NCBI RefSeq assembly: GCF_006345805.1
Contig: NW_021825805.1
Span: 1 to 14,308 of the forward strand
DNA from: Octopus sinensis
Lineage: Eukaryota
Reading direction: 5' to 3'
Length of the DNA: 14,308 nt
The translations under genes were made by a program, and so were the position numbers. The notes below the pieces were generated by a model. The model had not been told where the DNA came from and did no database searches. It saw only the letters and a list, made by a program, of their open reading frames with translations. Below are positions 1-13,797 of the stretch, in pieces (within the stretch, counting starts at the first letter, position 1; each line of letters opens with the position of its first letter).

Positions 1-212
1 GCATCTGGCTTGTCCCTCCAACATTGTTTGACAATCGATGCTGGTGCATTTACGTCCCCGTAACTTAGCGGTTCGGCGAAAGAACCGATAGATTAACTGC
101 TAGGCTAACAAGAATAGTCCTGGTGGTCAATTTGCTCGACTAAAGGTGGTTGCTCCAGCTTGGCCACAGTCAAATGACTGAAACAAGTAAAAGAAAGAAT
201 ATAAGAGAATAA
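1..212 (+). mobile_element. SINE family A, 3' half (window starts inside it)
   Basis: Matches the 3' halves of the copies at 7997-8406 and 12165-12595 (...ggtgctccagcatggcc..agtcaaatgactgaaacaagtaaaaga). Confidence 0.85.
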
Positions 213-489
213 AAAATTTGAACTTTCAAACTTTTTGTGTATTTCTACACACCATCTGAAGGAACCAGCCTTGGTATTTTACATAGAGAAATTCAGCATC
301 TGCTTGGATACTATTTATATCCCGCCGCTTACTATATACATGTATATATAGGTGCAGGAATGGCTGTGTGGTAAGAAGCTTGTGTCTCAACCACATGGTT
401 CTGGGTAAGTGTCTTCTACTGTAGCTTCAGGTTGACCAAAGCCTTGTGAGTGGATTTGGTAGACAGAAACTGAAAGACGCTTAGTATAT

Positions 490-597
490 GTATTGCTTTG
501 GCAATACATATACTAAAATTGGAATGATACAGTGAAGATTAGCATGGCCCCTTTGCAAGGATGACACCCAAATATGTGAAGCATTCCATATATTTTT
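490..597 (+). pseudogene. U6: Full-length U6 snRNA retropseudogene
   Basis: Colinear with U6: ...catatactaaaattggaatgatacagtgaagattagcatggcccctttgcaaggatgacacccaaatatgtgaagcattccatatattttt. The ACAGAGA box is mutated to ACAGTGA (529-535). It lies inside a SINE with no U6 promoter context and is flanked by a TSD. Confidence 0.93.
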
Positions 598-877
598 AAG
601 GCAGTGAACTGGCAGAAATGTTAGCACGTGGGCAAAATGCTTTGGCGGTATTTCGTCTTTTGTTACTTCTGAGTTCAAATTCTGCCGAGGTCGACTTTGC
701 TTTCATTTCTTGATCCGGGGGATGTGTATAAATCATACCAGTTCTATCACTTTGGGTTTGATGTCAATGTAAGTCGACTCAATCCCTTGTTGTCGTGCTC
801 AATCTCGTTTCTGTCGTCTCTAGTTCATCCATATTTTCAGTAATCACAAGCCTCCTGGTGTGGGCAATAAAGAAATG
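598..877 (+). mobile_element. SINE family B (tRNA-like head), fused directly downstream of U6
   Basis: aaggcagtgaactggcagaaatgttagcacg...gagttcaaattc... aligns to 6542-6715 and has the same 3' end, gtgggcaataaagaaat. Confidence 0.8.
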
Positions 878-1124
878 AGAAACTAGAAGACGCCTGTTGT
901 GTGTGTCTTTGTGTTTGCATTTGTTCCCTTCCCCCACCATTTAGCAACCAGTGTGATATGTTTTTGTGTCCCTGTAACTTAGTGGTTCAGCAAAAGAGAC
1001 TAAGAGAATAGGCGGTGCTCCAGCATGGTCGCAGTCTAATGACTAAAGCAAGTAGAAGATAAAACAAAAGAAAGATAAAAGAAACACACACTCACACAAT
1101 AAAAGAATTGATTTTTTTTGACTT

Positions 1125-1325
1125 TATATTATGACAGTTTCCGTAGAATTTTTATTTATTTTTACATCGTCTTTTTACATAAGAAGACCATTTTGTCAGA
1201 CATCCGTGTGCAACCGCCAGATGTATTGACAGCATGTCTGACGGAATAGTCTGATTACATCAAAGGATGATGTAATACGTTACTCAACAAATAAACAGCC
1301 GTTCTATGGAAACAGTCGTAACATA
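1125..1325. mobile_element. Candidate MITE of about 200 bp with TA ends
   Basis: 24-bp terminal inverted repeats (1125-1148 vs 1302-1325, 20/24 match) and two internal perfect 9-bp inverted repeats (1195-1203/1234-1242 and 1254-1262/1268-1276). Confidence 0.5.
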
Positions 1326-1705
1326 ATGTAAAAAATATCTCTTCTTTTTCTTGTGTTATTATGTTTCACTGTGATAAATCTGCAGGATATCCTTATTGCT
1401 ATAGATTTTCAGAGTTCTTACTGTCTGAATTAAACTCTGTAGAATAGCATTGTTTCTTTCATTGATCGGTCGACAGATAACGAGTATCATTAATATTCCT
1501 CTGAGTACTCTGTTAGCCAATGACATGTCAGTGTGCTCCTGAGTTCATTGTCTGCATTGCATAGATCTCCAGTACTTGATATGCTTGTGTGTGTATATGT
1601 GTGCTTATATATATTAATTAAAATCAGGAGAACACACACACAAACACATTGTGTTTGTGTATATATACATATATATATATATGTGCATGTATATATGTGT
1701 ATATA

Positions 1706-2098
1706 TGGAATGGAAGCACTCCGTCGGTTACGACGACGAGGGTTCTTGTTGATCCGAATCAACGGAACAGCCTGCTCGTGAAATTAACGTGTAAGTGGTT
1801 GAGCACTCCACAGACACGTGTACCCTTAACGTAGTTCTCGGGGATATTCAGCATGACACAGAGAGTGACAAGGCCGGCCCTTTGAAATACAGGTACAACA
1901 GAAACAGGAAGCAAGAGTGAGAGAAAGTTGTGGTGAAAGAGTACAGCAGGGATCACCACCATCCCCTGCCGGAGCCTCGTGGAGCTTTTTTAGGTGCTTT
2001 CGCTCAATAAACACTTACAATGCCCGGTCTGGGAATCGAAACCGCGATCCTATGACCGCGAGTCCGCTGCCCTAACCACTGGGCCATTGCGCCTCCAC
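1706..2098 (-). mobile_element. tRNA-derived SINE family D, full length
   Basis: Minus-strand head ggcgcaatggcccagtggttagggcagcggactcgcggtcataggatcgcggtttcgattccc has A-box and B-box-like motifs. Its tail is shared with 10653-10984. Confidence 0.85.
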
Positions 2099-2174
2099 AT
2101 GTGTATATATAATACTATAGCCTTGAGTCAAGTCTTTTATTATTACACACACATATATACACATACACACATAT

Positions 2175-2475
2175 CTCTTTTACTCTTTTACTTGTTTCAG
2201 TCATTTAACTGCAGCCATGCTGGAGCACCGCCTTTAGTTGAACAAATCGACCCCAGGACTTATTCTTTGTAAGCCTAGTACTTATTCTATCGGTCTCTTT
2301 TACTTGTTTCAATCATTTGACTGTGGCCATGCTGGAGCACCGCCTTTAGTTGAACAAATCGACCCCAGGACTTATTCTTTGTAAGCCTAGTACTTCGATC
2401 TCTATCGATCTCTTTTGCCGAACTGCTAAGCTATTGGAATGTAACACACCAGCATCGGTTGTCAAGCGATGTTGG
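2175..2475 (-). mobile_element. SINE family A 3' half with a 112-bp tandem duplication of its tail
   Basis: ccatgctggagcaccgcctttagttgaacaaatcgaccccagg occurs at 2215 and 2327; it is the reverse complement of the family A tail. Confidence 0.85.
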
Positions 2476-2629
2476 TCATCAGCGTGTGACAATCATGAGT
2501 TGTCGATGAAAAGTAGGCCTCTCTTTGCAAACATATATCCTTTTTCCAGTGATAAAATGTCGCTGATATCAAAAAAGTATAAACAAGCAATAATAAATCT
2601 CTGAGCGAGATATAAACAGTAGCTGCAAC

Positions 2630-2668
<39 letters not shown>

Positions 2669-2864
2669 CATGTATATATATTACGGAGATGTACTTGCAT
2701 AGCATGTGACTTGATCTGAGATCGTGTGCTGAAATAAACAACAATTGCAGCGTGGAAGGTGTTTATGAGCCATTTAAACCCATTAGATTCACTTCAACAT
2801 TAAAATTTAATTTGTCAAAAGATTTTTGTCGCTTTGAAACCGTGGTCAGTGAACACAAGGCAAT

Positions 2865-2904
<40 letters not shown>

Positions 2905-3146
2905 TATATATGTATGTATGTAAGTATAATATTAGAAGAAATGAGGTACTCAGAAATATGGATGGTTTTATATTTACAGATATTTTACATGTTTTTATAA
3001 ATCATATATCATATATTAGCGCTTTCGTCCACTCTAGCGGAGTTGTCAATTTCTTCTAATATATATACCTGTACATCATCTCCAAACATTCTATATATGT
3101 ATGTATATATATATGTGTATATATGTATGTATATTATATATACATA

Positions 3147-3524
3147 CATCATCATCGTTTAATTCGTTCGTCTCCATGCTAGCATGGGGGACGGTTCGAC
3201 CGGGGATCTGGGAAGCCAGAAGGCTGCACCAGGCTCCGGTCTTATCTGGCAATGTTTCTACTACAGCTGGATGCCCTTCCTAACGCCAACCACTCCGTGA
3301 GTGTAGTGGGTGCTTTTTACGTGCCACCTGTACTGGTGCCAGGCGAGGCTGGCATCGGCCACGGTCGGATTGGTGCATTTTACGTGCCACCTGCACTGGT
3401 GTCAGGCGAGGCTGGCATCGGCCACGGTTAGATTGGTGCATTTTACGTGCCACCTGCACGGAAGCCAGTCGAGGCGGCACTGGCTTTGGCCACGATTCGG
3501 ATGGTGTTTTTTACGTGCCACCGA
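3147..3524 (-). mobile_element. Family C retroelement with (ATG)n tail and internal ~63-bp repeats, 5'-truncated
   Basis: Reverse complement of 6716-7150. tacgtgccacc occurs at 3318, 3381, 3444 and 3512, and the (CAT)n tail is at 3147. Confidence 0.85.
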
Positions 3525-3570
3525 CAGATATATATATGTATGTATGTATATATATATATATGTATGTGTG

Positions 3571-3604
<34 letters not shown>

Positions 3605-3704
3605 TAAACACATATGGCCAGACAGTCGGACGGACGTGCTGTATTATACTAAAAATGTGATGCAGTGCCTCAGCTCTCGAGGGACACTTATTGCGGAAGA
3701 ACAA

Positions 3705-3800
3705 AGAGACGGTCAGTGTAGAGAGGGTCAGTACAATTGATTAAGCCCCTTAAAGGTGGTGCACCAGTGTGACTACTTCCAAGTGACTAAACATGGTTAA
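3705..3800 (+). mobile_element. Highly decayed SINE A-like tail
   Basis: aaggtggtgcaccagtgtgactacttccaagtgactaaaca resembles the family A 3' end. Confidence 0.45.
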
Positions 3801-3831
3801 ACAATGAACAAAAGAAAGATAATCATTCTCT

Positions 3832-3892
3832 GAAACTCTCTCTCTCTCTCTCCCTCTCTCTATTTATCTGTGTGCATCTCTCTCTCTCTTTC

Positions 3893-3949
<57 letters not shown>

Positions 3950-4088
3950 TTATATATATAATCAACTTGAGCTAACAAACAGCTAATTCAGTAAAGGTGA
4001 AAGTGTAAACTGTCTGAAATACACACACTCAAACACATACACACACATATATCTGTGTATTTATATATATATATATATATATATACAT

Positions 4089-4123
<35 letters not shown>

Positions 4124-4175
4124 GATATATATATATATATATAAATACACATGCACCACATACACATACTCAGAT

Positions 4176-4248
<73 letters not shown>

Positions 4249-4505
4249 GTGTATGTATATATATGTATGTATTCATGTATTCATATTTAACCTATGATCT
4301 GCATGTGTGTGTGTATATATATATATATTCATTATACATATATATGTATGTATGCATGCATTCATATGTATCTTATATGTATGTATGTATGTATATATTC
4401 ATTATATATACATAGATACATATAATATATATATATATATGTATATATTTATGCATATATATATTGACACACATATATATACATATGGTATGCATATACC
4501 TATAG

Positions 4506-4545
<40 letters not shown>
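3832..4545. repeat. Compound microsatellite region: (CT)n, (TA)n, (TATG)n, (CA)n
   Basis: Directly visible. Confidence 0.95.
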
Positions 4546-4916
4546 ACACACCCACGCAGAGTACATAGTCGTAAGATAGCTAGCATTTCAGCTCTTGAAA
4601 AGACACTTATCACATCAGACAGATGATAAAACTAATTTCAGATACACACACACACCCACACACACACACACACATATAAACATTAAGCACTCAGACATAC
4701 TCCCACACAAGGGTTACGCACACTATTACATACACACGCGCGCGCACACACACACGTGCATCTGCGCATACGCCGTTCGTCTCTCCTCCCCCTTCTCTGC
4801 CTCATCTCCCAGCAAAACATCACCGTGGAGAAATGTCAAGTAGAAGATTGGTTTGCGATGGTTTAGCAGGCTGGCCGGTCGGTCGGTCGGCTTGCTGGTT
4901 GCCTAGTTGGAAAGTG

Positions 4917-5488
4917 GCTGGTGGTGGTGGTGGTGGTGGTGGTAGTGGTGGTGGTGGTGGTGGTGGTGGTGTGGTGTTGCTGTGATGGTGTGGTGGTGGT
5001 GGTGTGGTGGTGGTGGTGGTGGTGGTGGTGGTGGTGGTGGTGGTGGGGGGTGGTGTTGCTGGTGGTGGTGGTAGTGGTGGTGGTGGTGGTGGTGTTGCTG
5101 GGGTGGTGGTGGTGTTGCTGGTGGTGGTGGTGGTGGTGGTGGTGGTAGTGGTGGTGGTAGTGGTGTGGTGGTGGTGGTGGTGTTGTGTGGTGGTGGTGGT
5201 GTTGCTGTGGTGGTGGTGGTGGTGGTGGTGGTGGTAGTGGTGGTGGTGGTGGTGTGGTGGTGGTGGTGTTGCTGGTGATGGTGTGGTGGTGGTGGTGGTG
5301 GTGGTGGTGGTGGTGATGATGGTGATGGTGGTGGTGGTGGTGGTGTTGCTGGTGGTGGTAGTTGTGGTGGTGGTGGTGGTGGTGGTGGTGGTGGTGGTGG
5401 TGTTGCTGGTGGTGGTAGTTGTGGTGGTGGTGGTGGTGGTGGTGGTGGTGGTGCTGTTTGTCTTTTTATTGTTGTTGTTGTTGTTGTT
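4917..5488. repeat. Long imperfect (GGT)n tract grading into (GTT)n
   Basis: Directly visible; it generates the poly-P, poly-H, poly-T, poly-V and poly-W pseudo-ORFs. Confidence 0.98.
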
Positions 5489-5516
5489 GGCATTGCAGTT
5501 GATTAAACTTCAAGTC

Positions 5517-6190
5517 AGGTGTCCTTTGGTGTTATTGTTCCAGCCATGACCACCTCAACTCTCATTCAGAAATAGCGTCTAAGGTATTATCTCATGTCCT
5601 TTGATGTAATTGTTGCTTAGCCCCAGGTCAGTCCTGATCCTGCTGACCTCAGATCAAGGTTGTTCCAATCATGACCACCTCTCCTCTCATTCAGAAATAG
5701 TATCTAAGGTATTATCTTGTGCTATGTCCTTTGGTGTTGTTGTTTAGCCCCGGGTCAGTCCTGGTCCTGCTGACCTCAGATCAAGGTGGTTCCAGTCATG
5801 ACCACCTCTCCTCTCATTCAGAAATAGCATCTAAGGTATTATCTCTTGTCGTGTCCTTTGGTGTTGTTGTTTAGCCCCAGGTCAGTCCTGATCCTGCTGA
5901 CCTCAGTTCAAGGTTGTTCCAGTCATGACCACCTCTCCTCTCATTCAGAAATAGCGTCTAAGGTATTATCTCGTGTCCTTTGATGTAATTGTTGCTTAGC
6001 CCAAGGTCAGTCCTGATCCTGCTGACCTCAGATCAAGGTTGTTCCAGTCATGACCACCTCTCCTCTCATTCAGAAATATCGTCTAAGGTATTATCTCATG
6101 TCCTTTGTGTTATTGTTGCTTAGCCCCAGGTCAGTCCTGATCCTGCTGACCTCAGATCAAGGTGGTTCCAGTCATGACCACCTCTCCTCT
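5517..6190. repeat. Minisatellite, about 5.3 units of 124-127 bp
   Basis: The anchor ctcattcag occurs at 5561, 5686, 5813, 5940 and 6065. Each unit has an aggtcag/ctgacct stem-loop. The first unit lacks about 50 bp, lost between tgtt microhomologies. Confidence 0.95.
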
Positions 6191-6404
6191 TTCAGTAATA
6201 TAGCATGTGGTAGGTAAGAAGCTCGCTTCCCAAACATATAGTTATATATATGTGTGTGTGTTTGTGTATGTGTATTCGTGCATGCGTGTGTGTGTTGTGT
6301 GTGTGTGTGTGTGTGTGTGTGTATAAATCCTTAAATCCTTAAAAATGTTTTAGCCCCCGAAGGCCACAGCCATGCTGGGGCACCTATATATATATTTATA
6401 TATA

Positions 6405-6541
6405 GGTGTAGGCATGGTTGTGTGGTAAGAAGCTTGCTGCCCCATCACTTGATCCAGGTTTGGTCTTACCATGTGGCACCTCTGCTATAGCCCTCGGCTG
6501 ACCAAACCCTTGTCAGTAGATATGGCATACAGAAACTGAAG
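6405..6541 (+). mobile_element. SINE family A 5' half
   Basis: ggtgtaggcatggttgtgtggtaagaagcttgc...agaaactgaag aligns to the family A head. Confidence 0.8.
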
Positions 6542-7217
6542 AAGGCGGCAAGCTAGCAGAAATGTTAGCATGCTGGGTGAAATGCTTAGCAGTATTTCGT
6601 CTGCCGCTACATTCTGAGTTCAAATTCCACTGAGGTCAATTTTTGCCTTTCTTCCTTTCAGGGTCAATAAATTAAGTACCAGTTACACACTGGGGTCGAT
6701 ATAATCGACTTAATCAAAATCGAAATCGATCAACATCAATGGAAATTGCAGCTGTGATACCAGTGCCGGTGGTACATAAGAGAACCATCCGAACGTGGCC
6801 GTTGCCAGCGCCGTCCCAACTGGTCCCATGCTGGTGGCACGTAAAAAGCACCATCTGATTGTGACCGTTGCCAGCCTCGCCTGGCCCACATGCCAGTGGC
6901 ACGTAAAAAGCACCCTCCGATCGTGGCCGTTTGCCAGCCTCGTCTGGCACCTGTGCCGGTGGCACATAAAAAGCACCCACTACACTCATGGAGTGGTTGG
7001 CGTTAGGAAGGGCATCCAGCCGTAGAAACATTGCCAGATCAGACTGGGCCTGGTGCAGCCTTCTGGCTTCCCAGACCCCAATTGAACCGTCCAACCCATG
7101 CTAGCATGGAAAGCGGACGCTAAACGAAGATCATGATGATGATGATGATGAATCCCTTTGTCTGTCCTTGTTTGACCCCCTCTATGTTTAGCCTCCTGTG
7201 GGCAATAAAGAAATAAG
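6542..7217 (+). mobile_element. SINE family B split by a family C insertion (B parts 6542-6715 and 7151-7217)
   Basis: gacttaatc | family C | aatccctttgtctg, with aatc duplicated at 6712-6715 and 7151-7154. Confidence 0.8.
6716..7150 (+). mobile_element. Family C retroelement (possibly RTE-partnered SINE or LINE 3' end) ending in (GAT)n
   Basis: Three internal ggtggcac(g/a)taaaaagcacc repeats, then gttggcgttaggaagggcatccagcc..., ending in a GAT tail at 7135-7150. The RTE link is inference only. Confidence 0.8.
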
Positions 7218-7301
7218 ACTGCTGGTGTCCCATGATCCATTCTCTCCACCGTTTATTACCACTCTCTATATCTGACTCCCTCTTTCTCTCTCTGTTTTCA
7301 G

Positions 7302-7392
7302 GCCCTGCTTAATCACAGACCAGATTCCCAGTGTAATGTTTCAACAGCTTCAACCAACCTATGGTTAAATAACCAGAAAGATATTGTTCCAT
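7302..7392 (+). CDS. Internal coding exon (91 bp, phase 0 to phase 1) of a classical, probably receptor-type, protein tyrosine phosphatase: ALLNHRPDSQCNVSTASTNLWLNNQKDIVP(Y)
   Basis: Strong polypyrimidine tract (tctttctctctctgttttcag) before 7302 and a GTAAGT donor at 7393. The frame is open and ends DIVP+T, which joins AT of the next exon to give the PTP motif DIVPYDH. From recall, a 91-bp exon followed by a 77-bp exon matches PTPRA-type domain exon architecture. Confidence 0.85.
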
Positions 7393-7524
7393 GTAAGTTG
7401 ACCATCTTACCTTGTTTTTTGTCAATGTTGTATGTTGTAGCTTCTGGTGTGGTGGCCTTTGTTTTTATGTTATTATTGTATTGTGTACGCTCACATCAGT
7501 GCAGTGTATATATATATATATATA

Positions 7525-7939
7525 TACCCCCTACTGTCACGTTCTTGTTAGATTGACAGTATACAACCATTCTATCGCCCCACCACCGTACATGTCTCTA
7601 TGAGAGATTTAGAAATTCAATATTTCTTATTTTGATAATCAGTGAATAGACTTCACTGAAAATAGATATATACAAATACGAAGTCGAGACGAATATCACC
7701 AGCTGACCGGTGTCTCCTACTCTAGGCCGATGAAGGACAACGATCCTGAAACACGTGTCCCTAGATGCAGTTTCGGCAGCAAGTGGGTGTTTGTCTCCCC
7801 TTCGTAAATGTATATAAGGACACAGGGAAAAATGTGTCAAAGCCATCAGGAGGCGTTCAATGCTTCCTAGGGTTATACAGCGGTGGTGTACCCACTACTG
7901 TCACGTTCTTGTTAGATTGACAGTATACAACCATTCTAT
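7525..7939 (+). mobile_element. Retrozyme-like element: 364-bp unit with 51-bp terminal redundancy (about 1.14 units), inserted in (TA)n
   Basis: 51-bp direct repeat at 7525-7575 and 7889-7939 (1 mismatch), with a hammerhead in between and (TA)n on both sides. It is colinear and homologous with the 353-bp unit. Confidence 0.8.
7721..7765 (+). ncRNA. Type I minimal hammerhead ribozyme (U4C core variant CCGATGA); predicted cleavage after GUC at 7759
   Basis: Stem I tctagg/cctaga (7721-7726 and 7760-7765). Core CCGATGA at 7727-7733. Stem II agga/tcct with loop caacga. GAAA at 7748-7751. Stem III is the palindrome acacgtgt, followed by C17. Confidence 0.85.
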
Positions 7940-7958
7940 ATATATATATATATAATAT

Positions 7959-7996
<38 letters not shown>

Positions 7997-8406
7997 GGCG
8001 TAGGAGTGGCTCTGTGGTAAGTAGCTTGCTTACCAACCACATGGTTCTTTGTTCAGTCCCACTGCATGGCACCTTGGGCAAGTGTCTTCTACTGTAGCTT
8101 ACCAAAGCCTTGTGAGTGGATTTGGTAGACGGAAACTGAAAGAAGCCCATCGTATATATGTATATATATATATATATATGAATGTGTGTGTGTTTGTGTA
8201 TATGTTTGTGTCTGTGTTTGTTCTCCCACCATCACTTGAAAACTGATGCTGGTGTGTTTACGTCCCCGTCACTCAGCAGTTCGGCAAAAGAGACCGATAG
8301 AATAAGTACTAGGCTTACAAAGAATAAGTCCTGGGGTTGATTTGCTCGACTAAAGGCAGTGCTCCAGCATGGTATCAGTCAAATGACTGAAACAAAATAG
8401 TAAAGA
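7997..8406 (+). mobile_element. SINE family A, full length (tRNA-like head, internal (TA)n(TG)n, conserved tail)
   Basis: Colinear with 12165-12595. Confidence 0.9.
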
Positions 8407-8412
8407 TATGGA

Positions 8413-8450
<38 letters not shown>

Positions 8451-9024
8451 ACACATACATACTTACAGAGGGGCAAAAGTATGTACCATCATAGAGGTCA
8501 TCTGCCCTGCAGATATAAATATCTCTTTGAAAAACAAAGAAAAAGAAGATATCTATGGACAACTGCTTGGTAACCTCCAGCTTCTATATCCAGACTATGA
8601 ATTCAAAGGAGTAAAGATTGTTTGCCAACATAACATGGCAGTCCTGGTTTAGGACGAATGTTACTGTAGTTTAGCCCCAGGAGACATCGTCTCCAGCTTG
8701 CTATATGACACGATCTGTGTCCTTATATTTTCAAACAAGGGAATCTAGCACCCCCATTCCCTTGTTTGAAAATATAAGGACACAGATCATGTCATATAGC
8801 CAGCTGGAACGATGTGTCCTGGGGCTAAATTACAGCAACATTCGTCCTAAACCAGGACTGCCATGTTATGTTGGCAAACAAACTTTACTACAAGGTACTG
8901 TTGCTGAATATCTCTCGTTGTGAGATTTAAAAATTGTAATTATCTAATTTATAGATCAGTGACTAGTTGTCGTTTTGAAAGCTATATATTTCAAACGGGA
9001 ATTTGGTAGTGCCACCTCTAGCCG

Positions 9025-9085
9025 AACAATTATTCTGTGCTGATGAAGGGAAATAACCCAGAAATCACGATACACAGATATTGTT
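9025..9085 (+). ncRNA. Type I minimal hammerhead ribozyme, copy 1 of the array (best preserved); predicted cleavage after 9072 (AUA)
   Basis: Stem I tctgtg/cacaga, extended by aacaat/attgtt across a bulge. Core CTGATGA at 9040-9046. Stem II ggg/ccc with loop aaataa and a mismatched closing pair. GAAA at 9061-9064. Stem III atc-ac-gat. Confidence 0.8.
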
Positions 9086-9377
9086 TTGAGCTGAGTTGGG
9101 GTGCTAGATTCCCTTGTTCGAAGACATAAGGACACAGATCGTGCTGTATAGCCAGCTGGAGATGATGTCTCCTGGGGCTAAATTACAGCAACATTCGTCC
9201 TAAACCAGGACTGCCATGTTATGTTGGCAAACAAACTTTACTACAAGGTACTGTTGCTGAATATCTCTCATTGTGAGATTTACAAATAGTAATTTTCTAA
9301 TTTATAGATCAGTGACTAGTTGTCACTTTGAAAACTATATATTTCAAACAGGAATATGGCAGCACCACCTCTAGCCG

Positions 9378-9438
9378 AACAATTATTCTGTACTGATGAA
9401 GGGAAATAACCCGGAAATCGCAATACACAGATATTGTT
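9378..9438 (+). ncRNA. Type I minimal hammerhead ribozyme, copy 2; predicted site after 9425
   Basis: CTGATGA at 9393-9399 and GAAA at 9414-9417, same architecture as copy 1. It has an A-C mismatch at the base of stem I and atcgcaat in stem III, so it may be impaired. Confidence 0.7.
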
Positions 9439-9730
9439 TTGAGCTGAGTGGGGTTGCTACATTCCCTTGTTCGAAAACATAAGGACACAGATCGTGTTAT
9501 ATAGCCAGCTGGAGACGATGTGTCCTGGGGATAAATTACAGCAACATTCGTCCTATACCAGGACTGCCATGTTATGTTGGCAAACAAACTTTACTACAAG
9601 GTACTGTTGCTGAATATCTCTCATTGTGAGATTTACAAATAGTAATTTTCTAATTTATAGATCAGTGACTAGTTGTCACTTTGAAAACTATATATTTCAA
9701 ACGGGAATATGGCAGCACCACCTCTAGCCG

Positions 9731-9791
9731 AACAATTATTCTGTACTGATGAAGGGAAATAACCCGGAAATCGCAATACACAGATATTGTT
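9731..9791 (+). ncRNA. Type I minimal hammerhead ribozyme, copy 3; predicted site after 9778
   Basis: CTGATGA at 9746-9752 and GAAA at 9767-9770; same motif and defects as copy 2. Confidence 0.7.
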
Positions 9792-10069
9792 TTGAGCTGA
9801 GTGGGGTTGCTAGATTCCCTTGTTCGAAAACATAAGGACACAGATCGTGTTATATAGCCAGCTGGAGACGATGTGTCCTGGGGCTAAATTACAGCAACAT
9901 TCGTCCTAAACCAGGACTGCCATGTTATGTTGGCAAACAAACTTTACTCCAAAGTACTGTTGCTGAATATCTCTCGTTGTGAGATTTACAAATAGTAATT
10001 TTCTATGAATTCATATTCACACCAATAATAATTGGAGCGCTAGGTTTTGTTAGTGTTAGTTAGTGCTTA

Positions 10070-10426
10070 GTTAGTGAAGGTGCATGGCTCAATGGTTAGA
10101 GCGTCGAGCTTACGATTGTGAGGTTGTGAGCTCGAATTCCAGACCGGGCTGCGTGTTGTGTTCTTGAGCAAGACACTTTATTTCACGTTGCTCCAGTTCA
10201 CTCAGCTGTAGAAATGAGTTGCGACGTCACTGGTGCCAAGCTGTATCGGCCCCTTTGCCTTTCCCTTGGATAACACTGGTGGCGTGGAGAGGGGAGGCCG
10301 GTATGCATGGGCGACTGCTGGTCTTCCATAAACAACCTTGTCCGGACTTGTGCCTGGGAGGGTAACTTTCTAGGTGCAATCCCATGGTCAGTGTCGTGAC
10401 CGAAGGGGGTCATAATAATTTAAATA
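10070..10426 (+). mobile_element. tRNA-derived SINE family E with a 12-bp TSD, inserted in the R4-like LINE
   Basis: Head ggtgcatggctcaatggttagagcg...gagctcgaattcc and central ttgagcaagacactttatttcacgttgctccag. TSD agttagtgctta at 10058-10069 and 10427-10438. Confidence 0.9.
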
Positions 10427-10652
10427 AGTTAGTGCTTAAAGGAGAATCTGGATAAACTGGGATTTTCAGAAAGAGAAATCGACCAAACAGTAAAAGAGAG
10501 GAACAGTAAAAATATGCAAGACTTTTCCCAAATTCCAAATGTGAATTTGTCTGTGTTAACTACATCCCAAAAGATGGAGCCTCGTATCTTCATTGAAAAC
10601 CGGCTTCCTCATTAGTGGAAGATTTATAATAATTAATAAATAGAAGAGACAT

Positions 10653-10984
10653 ACGACTGGCACTCTGTTAATTACAATGACAAGTGCTCCAGTCGAGCCA
10701 ATCAAAGAAACAGCTTGTTCATGATATTAACATGCAAATGGCTGAGTATTCCTCAGACATACATATCCTTAATATAGTTCTCAGAGAGATTCGGCATGAC
10801 ACAGAGCATGACAAGGCTGGGCCTTTGAATGGCATATATAACTAATGTTGGCCAGCTGGATGTACTGGAGCAATGTGAAATAAAGCATCTTGCTTAGGGT
10901 CACAAAGCACCATGGGGTATAGAACTCACAACTTTATGATCATAGGCTGAATACCCTAATCACTAAGCCATGCACCTTCACCAC
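10653..10984 (-). mobile_element. Old SINE with an E-type head and centre and a D-type tail
   Basis: Minus-strand agcaagatgctttatttcacattgctccagtacatccagctg matches family E; ttcaaaggcccagccttgtcatgctctgtgtcatgccgaat...gagaacta matches the family D tail. Confidence 0.75.
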
Positions 10985-11009
10985 TTTGATATATATATCT
11001 ACAGATACA

Positions 11010-11762
11010 ATACTTGGTTGGACCCATCGTTGGAGTTGGATCCCAGGCTCACTTGATGTTTCGGGTCTTAAACATAGACCTTCTTCCAGGCGACTTGACC
11101 CTGGTTGATCAAACCTAGGCTTGTATCTGTGTGGCATTCTACTGCCCCTTCCCCATCCCTCCCGGATATCAACCAGAACCATCTAGGTACATTCTCTGCA
11201 GCTTCTGTCGTCCTCATCTTCATCATCATTTAACGTCCATTTAATGTCCATGCTGGCATGGTTGGACATGGTTGTTAATGGGCCGTGGTCAGTGAACACA
11301 CAGCAATTGTGTGCATATATATATATATATATGTATGTATAATATTAGAAGAAATGGGGTACTCAGAAATATGGATGGTTTTATATTTACAGATATTTTA
11401 CATGTTTTTATAAATCATATATCATATATTAGCGCTTTCGTCCACTCTAGCGGAGTTGTCAATTTCTTCTAATATATAATACCTGTACATCATCTCCAAA
11501 CATTCTAATATATGTATGTATATATATATATGTGTATATATGTATGTATATATATATACATACATACATCATCATCGTTTAACGTTCGTTCTCCATGCTA
11601 GCATGGGTTGGACGGTTCGACCGGGGATCTGGGAAGCCAGAAGGCTGCACCAGGCTCCGGTCTTATCTGGCAATGTTCCTGTAGTGTCTGGGATTCCAAA
11701 GGCTTCGCTCAGGAACTGAACTGCTGACCCTTTACTCGCCACCTCGTCCTGGCTCTCCACCC
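11010..11762 (-). mobile_element. Degenerate C-terminal/3' UTR fragment of a HERO-like RLE non-LTR retrotransposon, split by the insertion at 11215-11677
   Basis: The minus strand encodes GWRART and EVASKGSAVQFLSE (11762-11680, with frameshifts) and TTEAAENVPRWFWL (11211-11170). These resemble the GWRAR..EVGCRGF..AAEKASRWLW C-terminus of such elements (recalled family motif). Confidence 0.5.
11283..11677. repeat. Dispersed direct duplicate of 2840-3256
   Basis: Near-identical over about 400 bp apart from microsatellite lengths and a few substitutions, including about 285 bp that is not family C sequence. Confidence 0.95.
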
Positions 11763-11939
11763 AATTTTTTTTTTTTTTGGAGGTCATCAATTATTTGGCG
11801 ATATGTTCAAAATAGAATCACATATAATAACAATAATCCAAAGCTGTATTGGTGCAATAACAGTTCAATAAATCTGCAATAACAGTTCAATAATGCTGCA
11901 TAAGTTTACAATAACTATGAAATAATTATACATAGCTGT

Positions 11940-12100
11940 GAGGTGGGGGGGGAGGCAGAAGAAGTTTGCTTCCCAACCACAAGGTTTGTGGGTTCAAATT
12001 CCACTGCATGGCTCGACGGCACCTTGGGTGAATATCTTCTGTTGTAACCCTAGGCTGACGCCGATGACTTGCGAGTGGATTTAGTGGACAGGAACTGCAT
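11940..12100 (+). mobile_element. Decayed SINE family A 5' half
   Basis: gcttcccaaccacaagg...ggcaccttgggtgaatatcttctg...gagtggatttagtggacaggaactg. Confidence 0.65.
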
Positions 12101-12164
12101 GAATCCCATCATTGCAATCACCATCATCAGCACGACTGCCATCAATCACTATCATCACCATCAT

Positions 12165-12345
12165 GAGTGGCTGTGTGGTAAGTAGCTTGTTTACCAACCA
12201 TATGGTTCTGGGTTCAGTCCCACTGCGTGGAACCTTGGGCAAGTGTCTTCTACTATAGCCTCGGGCCGACCAAAGCCTTGTGAGTGGATTTGGTAGACGG
12301 AAACTGAAAGAAGCCCGTCGTATATATGTATATATATATATATAT

Positions 12346-12384
<39 letters not shown>

Positions 12385-12595
12385 TTGTCTGTCTGTGTTT
12401 GTCCCCCTAGCATTGCTTGACAACCGATGCTGGTGTGTTTATGTCCCTGTCACTTAGCGGTTCGGCAAAAAGAGACCGATAGAATACGTACTGGGCTTAC
12501 AAAGAATAAGTCCCGGGGTCGATTTGCTCGATTAAAGGCGGTGCTCCAGCATGGCCGCAGTCAAATGACTGAAACAAGTAAAAGAGTAGAGAGTA
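12165..12595 (+). mobile_element. SINE family A, full length, young-looking (CpGs retained)
   Basis: gagtggctgtgtggtaagtagcttg...(TA)n(TG)n...gactgaaacaagtaaaagagt. Confidence 0.9.
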
Positions 12596-12741
12596 TCTAC
12601 ATCATTATCATTATCATCATCGCCATCATCAAAATCTTGCCCCCACAATGTTTAATATCGTTGCAATAATTTCATCCCTAAATGTTTACTAATGTTTCAA
12701 TAATGTTTAAATAATATCTTTGTGTGCTTGTATCATTACAG

Positions 12742-12818
12742 ATGACCACGCCCGGATAAGTTTACAAGAAATACCTCAGGGGTTTACCACAGATTATATC
12801 AATGCTAATTATATTGAT
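12742..12818 (+). CDS. Internal coding exon (77 bp, phase 1 to phase 0) of the same PTP domain: (Y)DHARISLQEIPQGFTTDYINANYID
   Basis: Acceptor cattacAG at 12740-12741 and donor GTAAGT at 12819. The translation contains the hallmark PTP motifs DHxRxxL and DYINANYID, and the phase is compatible with exon 7302-7392 (intron 7393-12741). Confidence 0.93.
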
Positions 12819-12847
12819 GTAAGTATATGACATTGCAACCTATAAAC

Positions 12848-13797
12848 TAGTGGTTTTCAACCAGGGTTCCGCGGAACCTTAGGGTTCCGCCAGTAGAGTC
12901 CAGGGGTTCCGCAAGAAGTTACAAAACTGCTAAAATCGGCAGAAATTTTAAAGTCTCCTGTGCAAATATGTGTGCATAAGACTATTAAATTATTGCACAG
13001 GGGTTCCTCGAGCCAGTGGAATGTTTCCTTGGGGTTCCGCTCCAGCAAAAAGTTTGAAAAGCACTGGTCTAACTAGTGTCTACCTGACTGTGTCTAACTC
13101 AGTGGTTTTCAACCAGGGTTCCGTGGAACCTTAGGGTTCTGCCAGTACAGTGCAGGGGTTCCGCAAGAAGTTACAAAACTGCTAAAATCGGCAGTAATTT
13201 TTAAGTCTCCTGTGCAAATATGTGTGCATAAGACTATTAAATTATTGCACAGGGGTTCCCCGAGCCAGTGGAATGTTTCCTTGGGGTTCCGCTCCAGCAA
13301 AAAGATTGAAAAGCACTGGTCTAACTAGTGTCTAACTGACTGTGTCTAACTCAGTGGTTTTTCAACCAGGGTTCCGTGGAACCTTAGGGTTCCGCCAGTA
13401 CAGTGCAGGGGTTCTGCAAGAAGTTACAAAACTGCTAAAATCGGCAGTAATTTTTATTTCTCCTGTGCAGATATGTGTGCATAAGACTAATAAATTATTG
13501 CACAGGGGTTCCTCGAGCCAGTGGAATGTTTCCTTGGGGGTTCCGCTCCAGCAAAAAAGATTGTAAAGCACTGGTCTAACTAGTGTCTAACTGACTGTGT
13601 TTAACTGACTGTGTCTAACTCAGTGGTTTTCAACCAGGGTTCCGCCAGTACAGTCCAGGGGTTCCGCAAGAAGTTACAAAACTGCTAAAATCGGCAGAAA
13701 TTTTTAAGTCTCCTGTTAAATTATTGCACAGGGGTTCCTCGAGCCAGTGGAATGTTTCCTTGGGGTTCCGCTCCAGCAAAAAGTTTGAAAAGCACTG
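12848..13797. mobile_element. Tandem array of four hAT (Buster/Charlie-type) MITEs separated by 33-47-bp spacers
   Basis: Copies at 12848-13066, 13100-13318, 13352-13573 and 13621-13797. Each has 13-bp TIRs CAGTGGTTTTCAA / TTGAAAAGCACTG (1 mismatch), repeated subterminal gggttcc motifs and 8-bp flanks with a central TA. Copy 4 has 18-bp and 24-bp internal deletions. Confidence 0.9.

What the first reader, a model, noticed from the sequence alone, without database searches (positions are those of the whole stretch)
8756..10005. The 353-bp satellite is a tandem hammerhead-ribozyme (retrozyme-like) array
Seen: each unit carries, at exact 353-nt spacing (9040, 9393, 9746), a type I hammerhead fold: stem I - CTGATGA - ggg/ccc hairpin - GAAA - short stem III - UA - stem I'. 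Stem I extends into a long imperfect rod (aacaat/attgtt, ctc-agc/gct-gag, tagtgcc/ggtgcta, gggaat/attccc). Established: tandem 150-400-nt repeats with type I hammerheads (newt satellite 2, schistosome Sm-alpha, metazoan non-LTR retrozymes, Penelope-like element pLTRs) self-cleave into monomers that can circularise. Inference: sense transcription, here supplied by the host PTP pre-mRNA because the ribozymes are on the same strand, would release two 353-nt monomers or circRNAs and could also cut the intron co-transcriptionally. I cannot tell from here whether this cephalopod family has been described.
Basis: partly seen in the sequence, partly recalled or inferred. Interest (0 to 1): 0.95.

Follow-up and report, generated by a model that had tools for sequence, protein, structure and literature searches.

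The report
Decaying hammerhead retrozyme repeats in an intron
The 353-bp tandem repeat is a copy of a known kind of mobile element, an animal "retrozyme" whose units each carry a small self-cutting hammerhead RNA motif, sitting in a phosphatase gene intron; the copies here look mutated and probably cut poorly, so it is an ordinary if neat example.

Summary
A 353-bp x3.5 array (8756-10005) carries a 45-nt type I hammerhead (HHR) motif on the + strand at 9034-9078, 9387-9431 and 9740-9784. A relaxed HHR descriptor finds only these three sites, and none in 3000 shuffles of the window.

New evidence came from a second family member (~56% identical) at 7528-7931 (+). Its HHR (7721-7765) keeps the catalytic core except U4->C. 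It differs from the array by four double-sided compensatory changes spread over helices I, II and III. Rfam Hammerhead_1 aligns to it end to end, but below threshold (14.3 bits).

The array insertion has an inverted 5'-truncated partial unit (8608-8755) and an 8-11 bp target-site duplication. The relative lies inside a (TA)n microsatellite. Both are Penelope-like-element (PLE) insertion hallmarks.

Both elements lie on the same strand as a receptor-type tyrosine phosphatase (PTP) exon (12742-12818), so they are most likely intronic and in sense orientation.

The local copies look impaired:
- 10.1/11.1 is A.A or A.G, not G-C.
- 2.1/1.1 is mismatched in two of the three copies.
- The helix III palindrome is lost, apparently by CpG decay.
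- No Rfam hammerhead hit at E<=10.

Verdict: a member of the known metazoan non-LTR retrozyme class. Self-cleavage at this locus is unproven and doubtful.

The parts
8756..10005 (+). Tandem array of 3.54 units of 353 bp (retrozyme-like). It would give two full cleavage-to-cleavage monomers, 9073-9425 and 9426-9778.
   Evidence: TRF, alignment A1, register comparison. GC is 39%.
9034..9078 (+). HHR copy 1. Helix I is 9034-9039/9073-9078 (6 bp). Core CUGAUGA is 9040-9046. Helix II is A.A + GGG/CCC with loop AAAUAA (9047-9060). GAAA is 9061-9064. Helix III is A-U, U-A with loop CACG (9064-9071). A17 is 9072, and predicted cleavage is 9072|9073.
   Evidence: Sequence, descriptor, family covariance model 78.6 bits.
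9387..9431 (+). HHR copy 2. Same layout, but 2.1/1.1 is A.C, 10.1/11.1 is A.G, and loop III is CGCA. Predicted cleavage is 9425|9426.
9740..9784 (+). HHR copy 3, identical to copy 2. Predicted cleavage is 9778|9779.
8608..8755 (-). Inverted, 5'-truncated partial unit joined head-to-head to the array. It contains no HHR. With 8756-8889 it forms a roughly 140-bp near-perfect hairpin.
   Evidence: Inverted repeats at 91-96%. Hairpin fold -226.5 kcal/mol, z -31. It is closest to unit 1 (I4/I5).
8595..8605 (.). Left copy of the target-site duplication CTATGAATTCA.
   Evidence: Longest common substring of the two junction windows is 11 nt. The frequency of a match this long is 5e-5 in composition-matched random sequence and 0.005 for same-spacing placements in this repeat-rich window.
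10003..10013 (.). Right copy of the target-site duplication. Its first 3 nt (CTA) are also the last bases of the unit, so the duplication is 8-11 bp.
   Evidence: sequence.
7528..7931 (+). Second, diverged family member: 1.13 units of about 356 bp, homologous over the whole unit (56% identity). It is bounded on both sides by (TA)n. A 45-bp terminal overlap, 7531-7575 = 7887-7931, is 100% identical.
   Evidence: blastn E 8e-6. Alignments A2 and MAFFT give 191 identical positions against 117 (maximum 138) for shuffles. The circular fold has z -6.1.
7721..7765 (+). HHR of the relative. Helix I is UCUAGG/CCUAGA. The core is C-C-GAUGA (U4->C). Helix II is AGGA/UCCU, so 10.1-11.1 is a paired A-U, with loop CAACGA. 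GAAA follows. Helix III is A-U, C-G with loop ACGU, making the 8-mer ACACGUGU perfectly palindromic. C17 is 7759.
   Evidence: Rfam RF00163 Hammerhead_1 aligns to model positions 1-45 of 45, 14.3 bits, E 0.49, below the gathering score of 34. Covariation is shown.
12742..12818 (+). Context: a PTP catalytic-domain exon, (Y)DHARISLQEIPQGFTTDYINANYID, with acceptor ..ttacag| and donor |gtaagt. It starts in the middle of the domain, so an upstream exon must lie outside the window. Positions 1-12741 are therefore inferred to be intron.
   Evidence: PDB phmmer hits to RPTP sigma, gamma, zeta and LAR at E 1e-6 to 5e-5.

Best explanation
Positions 8606-10005 are one old insertion of a non-autonomous, non-coding retroelement of the metazoan 'non-LTR retrozyme' kind. 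Positions 7528-7931 are a second, independent insertion of a diverged subfamily.

In the family's life cycle, a multimeric sense transcript is cut once per unit by a 45-nt type I hammerhead. This hammerhead has a 6-bp helix I, a 4-position helix II with a 6-nt loop, and a 2-bp helix III with a palindromic tetraloop. The weak helix III means two neighbouring hammerheads act as a dimer through an extended, self-complementary helix III. [quoted passage not shown] A Penelope-like element (PLE) reverse transcriptase/endonuclease then copies the circle round and round at a nicked target. That yields a tandem array, a variable-length target-site duplication and often an inverted 5'-truncated copy.

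Shown here: the motif, its covariation, the self-paired unit, the duplication, the inverted truncated copy, the (TA)n target, and the sense orientation relative to the PTP exon. Inferred from the literature: cleavage, circularisation and PLE mobilisation.

At this locus the copies appear to be decaying neutrally inside the PTP intron. Their hammerheads are probably weak or dead, so little or no processing of the host pre-mRNA is expected.
For: - Motif: present once per unit on one strand only and absent from 3000 shuffles.
- Geometry: identical to the Rfam RF00163 consensus, with a 6-bp helix I, a 14-nt helix II plus loop, an 8-nt helix III segment and 45 nt in total.
- Covariation: on alignment A3, 4 of 12 HHR pairs change on both sides between array and relative, and none changes on one side only. 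The changes are 2.2-1.2 U-A/G-C, 2.3-1.3 G-C/A-U, 10.4-11.4 G-C/A-U and 15.2-16.2 U-A/C-G. Slid-partner controls give 0-1, and 1 of 500 shuffles reaches this value. The core G5 A6 U7 G8 A9 G12 A13 A14 A15.1 U16.1 is invariant.
- Helix III: it is perfectly palindromic in the relative (ACACGUGU). In the array it becomes palindromic (AUCGCGAU, dimer duplex -12.1 kcal/mol) if the two CpG->CpA differences between copies are read as decay. Palindromic helix III and dimer action are the published hallmark of metazoan type I HHRs (PMC4209133, PMC7229834).
- Unit properties: 353-356 bp, 39-43% GC, no coding capacity, strongly self-paired as circles with z -4.3 to -6.1. These match the published description (PMC7229834, PMC7761336).
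- Insertion signature: an 8-11 bp duplication around the whole composite, an inverted 5'-truncated copy at the upstream end and the relative lying inside (TA)n. These match the PLE insertion features in PMC8557442 and the PLE origin proposed in bioRxiv 10.64898/2026.07.22.740005.
- Precedent: an axolotl retrozyme HHR with a mismatch at the base of helix II, a 2-bp helix III and a 350-bp unit still self-cleaves, better as a dimer (PMC7229834).
Against: - Rfam's hammerhead models do not report the array copies at E<=10, even on an 81-nt input. The relative scores only 14.3 bits against a gathering score of 34.
- The G10.1-C11.1 pair, described as highly conserved (PMC4209133), is A.A or A.G in the array.
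- The relative has C at core position 4.
- The comparative evidence rests on only two independent lineages, both from this window.
- No copy from elsewhere in the genome, and no RNA data, could be obtained.
- Within the array the HHR is no better conserved than the rest of the unit: 4 of 45 positions vary, against 24 of 308.
- The source organism and the presence of PLEs in its genome are unknown.
Confidence: 0.8

Rival explanations
1. The repeats are pseudo-LTR (pLTR) fragments of an autonomous Penelope-like element. They would be extreme 5'-truncated PLE insertions consisting only of the terminal repeat, rather than a dedicated non-autonomous retrozyme family.
For: The partial tandem, the inverted 5'-truncated copy, the duplication and the (TA)n target are PLE insertion features (PMC8557442). 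PLE pLTRs carry HHRs (PMC4209133). Xenopus retrozymes are sequence-related to pLTRs (10.64898/2026.07.22.740005).
Against: - No reverse transcriptase or endonuclease ORF remnant adjoins either insertion.
- Both insertions are whole-unit multiples of a 353-356-nt self-paired unit.
- The HHR has the 'canonical' retrozyme layout: a 4-position helix II with a 6-nt loop, and a helix III with a tetraloop. Metazoan PLE HHRs are described as minimal variants with a 6-8 bp helix II and no helix III (PMC4209133).
- The distinction is partly semantic if retrozymes derive from pLTRs.
Confidence: 0.12
2. It is an ordinary satellite that grew by unequal crossing-over or slippage. The hammerhead-like motif would be a chance resemblance or a long-dead fossil with no role in how the repeat arose.
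For: There is no Rfam hit for the array copies. The pairs at 10.1/11.1 and 2.1/1.1 are mismatched. Units 2-4 are much closer to each other than to unit 1, as local duplication or homogenisation would give.
Against: Chance is excluded in practice: 0 hits in 3000 shuffles. Chance cannot explain four compensatory changes with a conserved core in an independent diverged copy. The duplication and inverted truncated copy point to insertion as a block. A second insertion 700 bp away in a (TA)n tract shows the family is or was mobile.
Confidence: 0.05
3. It is a domesticated intronic ribozyme. The sense-strand hammerheads would be kept by the host to cut the PTP pre-mRNA intron or to produce regulatory circRNAs, like the conserved intronic HHRs of amniote genes.
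For: Both elements are in sense orientation in the inferred PTP intron. Intronic type I HHRs with proposed roles in mRNA biogenesis exist in amniotes (PMC6155905).
Against: The copies accumulate CpG-type and other substitutions in the HHR at the same rate as elsewhere. Each HHR carries a predicted disabling change. About 42-44% of Xenopus retrozyme copies overlap introns without implied function (10.64898/2026.07.22.740005). Two sense copies out of two is not a significant bias.
Confidence: 0.03

Closest known systems
Metazoan non-LTR retrozymes (Cervera & de la Pena 2020, PMC7229834; review PMC7761336)
   Same: Tandem repeats of 150-450 bp and GC below 50%, with one type I HHR per unit. There is no LTR, PBS, PPT or ORF. 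The target-site duplication is longer than 4 bp, and the unit is highly self-paired. Retrozymes are described in molluscs (mussel), corals and amphibians.
   Different: The sequence family is unrelated to any I could retrieve. RNA expression and circularity are untested. The local HHRs carry a non-canonical 10.1/11.1 pair.
Axolotl retrozyme Rtz353 / HHR_Amex2 (PMC7229834)
   Same: A unit of about 350 bp. [quoted passage not shown] There is a mismatch at the base of helix II. It is weak as a monomer and better as a dimer.
   Different: The mismatch is U.U there and A.A or A.G here. The host phylum differs. Cleavage was measured there and not here.
Newt satellite 2 / Rfam RF00163 Hammerhead_1 consensus
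   Same: The same 45-nt geometry: a 6-bp helix I, a 14-nt helix II plus loop, and a palindromic 8-nt helix III segment. The dimeric mechanism is also shared (PMC6155905).
   Different: The score is below the gathering threshold: 14.3 bits for the relative and no reported hit for the array copies. G10.1-C11.1 is replaced.
Penelope-like element pLTR hammerheads (PMC4209133, PMC8557442)
   Same: Type I HHRs occur in tandem repeats. The insertion architecture matches: partial tandem, inverted 5'-truncated copy, variable duplication and a microsatellite target.
   Different: There is no RT/GIY-YIG ORF here. PLE HHRs of animals are minimal, with a long helix II and no helix III. Here helix II is short and helix III is present.
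Conserved intronic hammerheads of amniotes (RECK, CTCL, DTNB; PMC6155905)
   Same: A type I HHR in sense orientation inside an intron of a protein-coding gene.
   Different: Those are single-copy and ultraconserved. These are multi-copy and diverging, and each carries a likely disabling change.

Membership tests
Hammerhead ribozyme, type I (RF00163) | Conserved core C3 U4 G5 A6 N7 G8 A9 ... G12 A13 A14 | tested here: met
   Intact in all three array copies. The relative at 7727-7733 has C4 instead of U4.
Hammerhead ribozyme, type I (RF00163) | Three helices around the core, with helix I open (type I), A15.1-U16.1, and H17 not G | tested here: met
   Descriptor hits at 9040, 9393 and 9746. H17 is A in the array and C in the relative. 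The geometry equals the Rfam consensus.
Hammerhead ribozyme, type I (RF00163) | G10.1-C11.1 base pair closing helix II | tested here: not met
   A.A in copy 1, A.G in copies 2 and 3, and A-U (paired but not G-C) in the relative. A retrozyme HHR with a U.U mismatch at this place is reported to cleave (PMC7229834).
Hammerhead ribozyme, type I (RF00163) | Covariance-model score at or above Rfam's gathering threshold (34 bits) | tested here: not met
   No hammerhead hit for the array at the gathering threshold or at E<=10. The relative scores 14.3 bits, E 0.49, over the full-length model.
Hammerhead ribozyme, type I (RF00163) | Helices supported by compensatory substitutions | tested here: met
   4 of 12 pairs change on both sides and 0 on one side only. 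Slid controls give 0-1, and 1 of 500 shuffles reaches this value. Only two independent lineages were available.
Hammerhead ribozyme, type I (RF00163) | Site-specific Mg2+-dependent self-cleavage | not testable with these tools
   Needs in vitro transcription. Thermodynamic proxies are unfavourable for the present copies.
Metazoan non-LTR retrozyme | Tandem units of about 150-450 bp, each with one type I HHR, and GC below 50% | tested here: met
   353 bp x3.54, one HHR per complete unit, GC 39%.
Metazoan non-LTR retrozyme | Non-coding | tested here: met
   Only short ORFs occur in the unit, and the longest, 92 aa, has no homologue.
Metazoan non-LTR retrozyme | No LTR, PBS or PPT | not tested
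   I read the unit and noticed none, but I ran no explicit scan for LTR, PBS or PPT motifs.
Metazoan non-LTR retrozyme | Unit-length RNA predicted to be highly self-paired | tested here: met
   Circular minimum free energy is -99.7 to -111.2 kcal/mol, z -4.3 to -6.1, with 62-67% of bases paired, in both subfamilies (linear fold).
Metazoan non-LTR retrozyme | Retrotransposition signature (a target-site duplication longer than 4 bp; dispersed copies) | tested here: met
   An 8-11 bp duplication. A second diverged insertion lies about 700 bp away with different flanks. Genome-wide copy number is unknown.
Metazoan non-LTR retrozyme | Expression as linear and circular unit-length RNA; co-occurrence with autonomous PLEs | not testable with these tools
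   No transcriptome or host genome was available. Collection scans found nothing.
Penelope-like element (autonomous) | RT + GIY-YIG ORF between pseudo-LTRs | tested here: not met
   No long ORF lies in or next to either insertion.
Penelope-like element (autonomous) | Insertion architecture: partial tandem, inverted 5'-truncated copy at the 5' end, variable duplication, microsatellite targets | tested here: met
   compared with the description in PMC8557442.

The most novel reading that the evidence does not exclude
The array's hammerhead may be a naturally active variant in which the canonical G10.1-C11.1 pair is replaced by a purine-purine (A.G) pair that extends the core's tandem sheared G.A pairs. 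In that case, sense transcription of the PTP intron would make the host pre-mRNA a source of about 353-nt ribozyme-processed circRNAs. It would also produce a roughly 140-bp dsRNA hairpin from the inverted copy, giving an intron-hosted route of retrozyme expression and possibly of host-gene modulation.
Probability: 0.12. Interest if true: 0.6.

Novelty: new member of a known kind. Interest (0 to 1): 0.38.

Why it matters
If the family is confirmed genome-wide, it adds a lineage to the catalogue of animal retrozymes. The only mention is a count of 235 Rfam Hammerhead_1 loci in the giant squid genome (PMC6962438).

The more useful point is structural. This single locus shows an ORF-less hammerhead tandem array inserted with the full set of PLE hallmarks: an inverted 5'-truncated copy, a partial tandem, a variable duplication and a (TA)n target. 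That is direct integration-site evidence for the proposal that PLE machinery mobilises animal retrozymes.

It also shows that Rfam's hammerhead models miss decayed or variant retrozyme HHRs that a descriptor plus a within-family comparison recovers.

Tried and rejected
- **Rfam.** I ran the gathering threshold on the whole window, E<=10 on 8500-10300, and E<=10 on 81 nt around copy 1. None gave a hammerhead hit for the array. The sub-threshold mir-5595, MIR821 and SCARNA16 hits are artefacts of the 140-bp inverted repeat.
- **Relatives elsewhere.** I used the 92-aa unit-spanning ORF as a proxy to fish other copies from the protein collection and found nothing.
- **Organism.** The PTP exon peptide was too short to query. 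A 40-aa padded version found nothing. ARAGORN found no tRNA genes. The 'cephalopod' label remains untested.
- **More hammerheads in the window.** A family covariance model (R1) run with filters off returned only the four sequences it was built from. The next hit (13458-13510, 10.7 bits) is a plain inverted repeat without the core. The 252-bp, 127-bp, 112-bp and 63-bp arrays have no CUGANGA...GAAA core.
- **Paralogous empty site.** Joining the two flanks and searching the window gave no informative match.
- **Covariation in the long helix I extension.** Between unit 1 and units 2-3 I found only one-sided changes: two wobble-to-Watson-Crick changes and two disruptions, by hand. Between subfamilies the register shifts, so I did not count it.
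- **Chance resemblance.** Considered and rejected on the evidence.
Full report
**1. The observation**

Tandem Repeats Finder reports a 353-bp period, 3.5 copies, 95% matches and 0% indels at 8756-10005. The string CTGATGA-A-GGG-AAATAA-CCC-(A/G)-GAAA occurs at 9040, 9393 and 9746, on the + strand only. The only other CTGANGA...GAAA string in the window (6536) has no hammerhead context.

Reading the sequence, each site has the layout of a type I hammerhead (HHR):
- helix I of 6 bp (UCUGUG/CACAGA, 9034-9039 with 9073-9078 in copy 1);
- the core CUGAUGA;
- helix II, GGG/CCC, with loop AAAUAA;
- GAAA;
- a 2-bp helix III (A15.1-U16.1 and U15.2-A16.2) with a tetraloop;
- A17, then the 3' strand of helix I.

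I wrote a relaxed descriptor that also allows an unpaired nucleotide on either side of helix II and a mismatch at 1.1/2.1. It returns exactly these three sites, with H17 at 9072, 9425 and 9778. It returned nothing in 3000 dinucleotide-preserving shuffles of the window on both strands.

The long imperfect helix that continues helix I is present in the minimum-free-energy fold of the cleavage-phased monomer (-106.3 kcal/mol, z -4.85).

**2. What standard tools say**

Rfam gives no hammerhead hit for the array. This holds at the gathering threshold on the window, at E<=10 on 8500-10300, and at E<=10 on 81 nt around copy 1. The reasons are visible in the sequence:
- The nucleotides at 10.1 and 11.1 are A.A (copy 1) or A.G (copies 2 and 3) instead of the G-C pair that is highly conserved in hammerheads (PMC4209133).
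- Copies 2 and 3 have A2.1.C1.1 next to the scissile bond.
- The monomeric hammerhead fold is 6.7 kcal/mol less stable than an alternative fold that pairs UGAU of the core with AUCG/AUCA of helix III.

**3. A second family member gives comparative evidence**

A blastn search of the unit against the rest of the window hit 7592-7682 (+) (E 8e-6). Alignment shows that 7528-7931 is homologous to the whole unit. It shares 191 identical positions of 341 aligned (56%), against a mean of 117 and a maximum of 138 for shuffled controls.

This relative carries its own hammerhead at 7721-7765:
- helix I UCUAGG/CCUAGA;
- core CCGAUGA (U4->C);
- helix II AGGA/UCCU, with A10.1-U11.1 paired;
- GAAA;
- helix III A-U and C-G with loop ACGU;
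- C17.

Rfam's Hammerhead_1 model aligns to exactly these 45 nt, end to end. The score is 14.3 bits against a gathering score of 34, with E 0.49 on the 86-nt input. The model consensus has the same dimensions as both local hammerheads.

On alignment A3, 4 of the 12 hammerhead pairs differ between array and relative by changes on both sides that keep pairing:
- 2.2-1.2, U-A to G-C;
- 2.3-1.3, G-C to A-U;
- 10.4-11.4, G-C to A-U;
- 15.2-16.2, U-A to C-G.

No pair changes on one side only. Sliding the 3' partners by 1-3 columns gives 0-1 such pairs, and 1 of 500 shuffles reaches the observed values. Apart from U4, the unpaired core is identical in the two lineages.

This is the substitution pattern of a structure that was under selection in the family's history. 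The caveat is that there are only two independent lineages, both from this window.

**4. Dimer-type helix III**

In the relative, the 8-mer ACACGUGU (15.1 to 16.1) is perfectly self-complementary. In the array it reads AUCACGAU (copy 1) or AUCGCAAU (copies 2 and 3).

The two differences between copies are both CpG/CpA alternatives. If they are read as decay of CGCG, the ancestral 8-mer AUCGCGAU is also a perfect palindrome. Its intermolecular duplex is -12.1 kcal/mol, against -1.9 to -3.4 kcal/mol for today's sequences.

A short helix III capped by a palindromic loop, and action as a dimer of neighbouring motifs, is the published signature of metazoan type I hammerheads in tandem repeats (PMC4209133, PMC6155905, PMC7229834). 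The ancestral-state step is my inference.

**5. The unit as a whole**

The units have these properties:
- They are 353-356 bp long with 39-43% GC.
- They contain no meaningful ORF. The 92-aa ORF spanning the HHR has no homologue.
- They fold as circles into strongly self-paired structures in both subfamilies despite 56% identity (z -4.3, -5.6 and -6.1).

These are the properties listed for metazoan non-LTR retrozymes: tandem repeats of 150-450 bp, GC below 50%, no LTR/PBS/PPT, duplications longer than 4 bp, and self-paired circRNAs of 170-400 nt (PMC7229834, PMC7761336).

**6. How it got there**

An inverted, 5'-truncated partial unit (8608-8755, 91-96% complementary to the units) abuts the array head-to-head. 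The whole composite, 8606-10002/10005, is flanked by CTATGAATTCA at 8595-8605 and 10003-10013. An 11-nt match between the two junction windows has frequency 5e-5 in composition-matched random sequence. It has frequency 0.005 for same-spacing placements in this repeat-rich window.

The relative is a 1.13-mer. Its 45-bp terminal overlap, 7531-7575 = 7887-7931, is 100% identical, and it is bounded on both sides by (TA)n.

Partial tandems, an inverted 5'-truncated copy at the upstream end, duplications of variable length and insertion into (TA)n microsatellites are the insertion features described for Penelope-like elements (PLEs) (PMC8557442). PLEs are the proposed mobilisers and ancestors of animal retrozymes (PMC7229834; bioRxiv 10.64898/2026.07.22.740005). 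No RT or endonuclease ORF is present, so these are non-autonomous copies.

**7. Host context**

A 77-nt exon lies on the + strand at 12742-12818 (acceptor ttacag|, donor |gtaagt). It encodes (Y)DHARISLQEIPQGFTTDYINANYID. This peptide matches the catalytic domains of receptor-type PTPs sigma, gamma, zeta and LAR at E 1e-6 to 5e-5.

The exon starts in mid-domain, and the preceding KNRY motif is not in the window. The upstream 12.7 kb is therefore most likely intron.

In Xenopus, 42-44% of retrozyme copies overlap introns (10.64898/2026.07.22.740005), so this location is unremarkable.

**8. State of the local copies**

Across one period there are 28 variable columns. Seven of them are CpG transitions. 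Four variable columns fall in the 45-nt HHR and 24 in the other 308 nt, so the ribozyme shows no sparing since the units diverged.

Each hammerhead carries at least one change expected to lower activity:
- copy 1: A.A at 10.1/11.1 and a non-palindromic loop III;
- copies 2 and 3: A.G at 10.1/11.1, A.C at 2.1/1.1, and a non-palindromic loop III;
- the relative: C4. From general knowledge of hammerhead mutagenesis (not tested here), core substitutions other than at position 7 are strongly deleterious. This copy is also solitary, so it has no dimer partner and no second cleavage site.

A precedent argues against writing the array copies off entirely. The axolotl HHR_Amex2 has a U.U mismatch at the base of helix II and a 2-bp helix III. 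It still cleaves weakly as a monomer and well as a dimer (PMC7229834).

My estimates are about 0.8-0.9 that the family encodes or encoded a working hammerhead, and about 0.3-0.4 that a dimeric transcript of this locus shows measurable cleavage in vitro.

**9. Comparison with the known, and novelty**

By architecture this is a member of the metazoan non-LTR retrozyme class. Its hammerhead belongs to the newt, axolotl and Schistosoma 'canonical type I' group rather than to the minimal PLE type. It fails two formal hammerhead criteria, the G10.1-C11.1 pair and the Rfam gathering score. I therefore file it as a variant or decayed member rather than a textbook one.

I found no publication that characterises retrozymes in cephalopods. 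The giant squid genome paper lists 235 Rfam Hammerhead_1 loci without further analysis (PMC6962438). The window's organism could not be established.

Nothing here is new in kind. The locus is a clean illustration of PLE-style integration of a retrozyme, and of a hammerhead that covariance-model annotation misses.

**10. What could not be done**

I had no host genome, no transcriptome and no biochemistry. The scans of metagenome and viral contig collections and the protein-collection proxy all returned nothing. Family-wide conservation, copy number, expression and cleavage remain open.

Noticed in passing
window 7528-7931 (+): A second, diverged (~56% identical) retrozyme-like insertion of 1.13 units lies inside a (TA)n microsatellite. 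It has its own hammerhead at 7721-7765. It lies outside the finding's coordinates but supplied the key covariation evidence.
   Followed up: yes
window 8608-8900: The inverted partial unit plus the start of the array forms a roughly 140-bp near-perfect hairpin (-226.5 kcal/mol, z -31). It causes spurious sub-threshold miRNA-family hits (mir-5595, 40 bits). In a sense intron transcript it would be long dsRNA, a possible substrate for editing or small-RNA pathways.
   Followed up: partly
window 490-595 (+): A full-length U6 snRNA sequence (Rfam 97.8 bits) ending in a T-run. It begins where a dispersed SINE-like repeat (other copies at 8081-8177 and 12249-12345) normally continues into a (TA)n tail. 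It may therefore be a retro-copy or chimera rather than a bona fide U6 gene.
   Followed up: no
window 12742-12818 (+): A 77-nt exon encoding the DHxRxxL...DYINANYID segment of a receptor-type protein tyrosine phosphatase catalytic domain. It is the only coding exon recognised in the window.
   Followed up: partly
window 12845-13716 and 5535-6206: Two other medium-period tandem arrays. The 252-bp x3.5 array starts 27 nt after the PTP exon donor. The other is 127/252-bp x5.2. Neither contains a hammerhead core, and the family covariance model does not hit them.
   Followed up: partly
window 10-186, 8218-8395, 12399-12588 (+) and 2181-2395 (-): Several copies of a dispersed SINE-like repeat, along with many (TA)n, (AC)n, (GTG)n and (TCT)n tracts. 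The intron is almost entirely repeats. A further short interspersed repeat starts at about 10064, directly after the right-hand target-site duplication.
   Followed up: no
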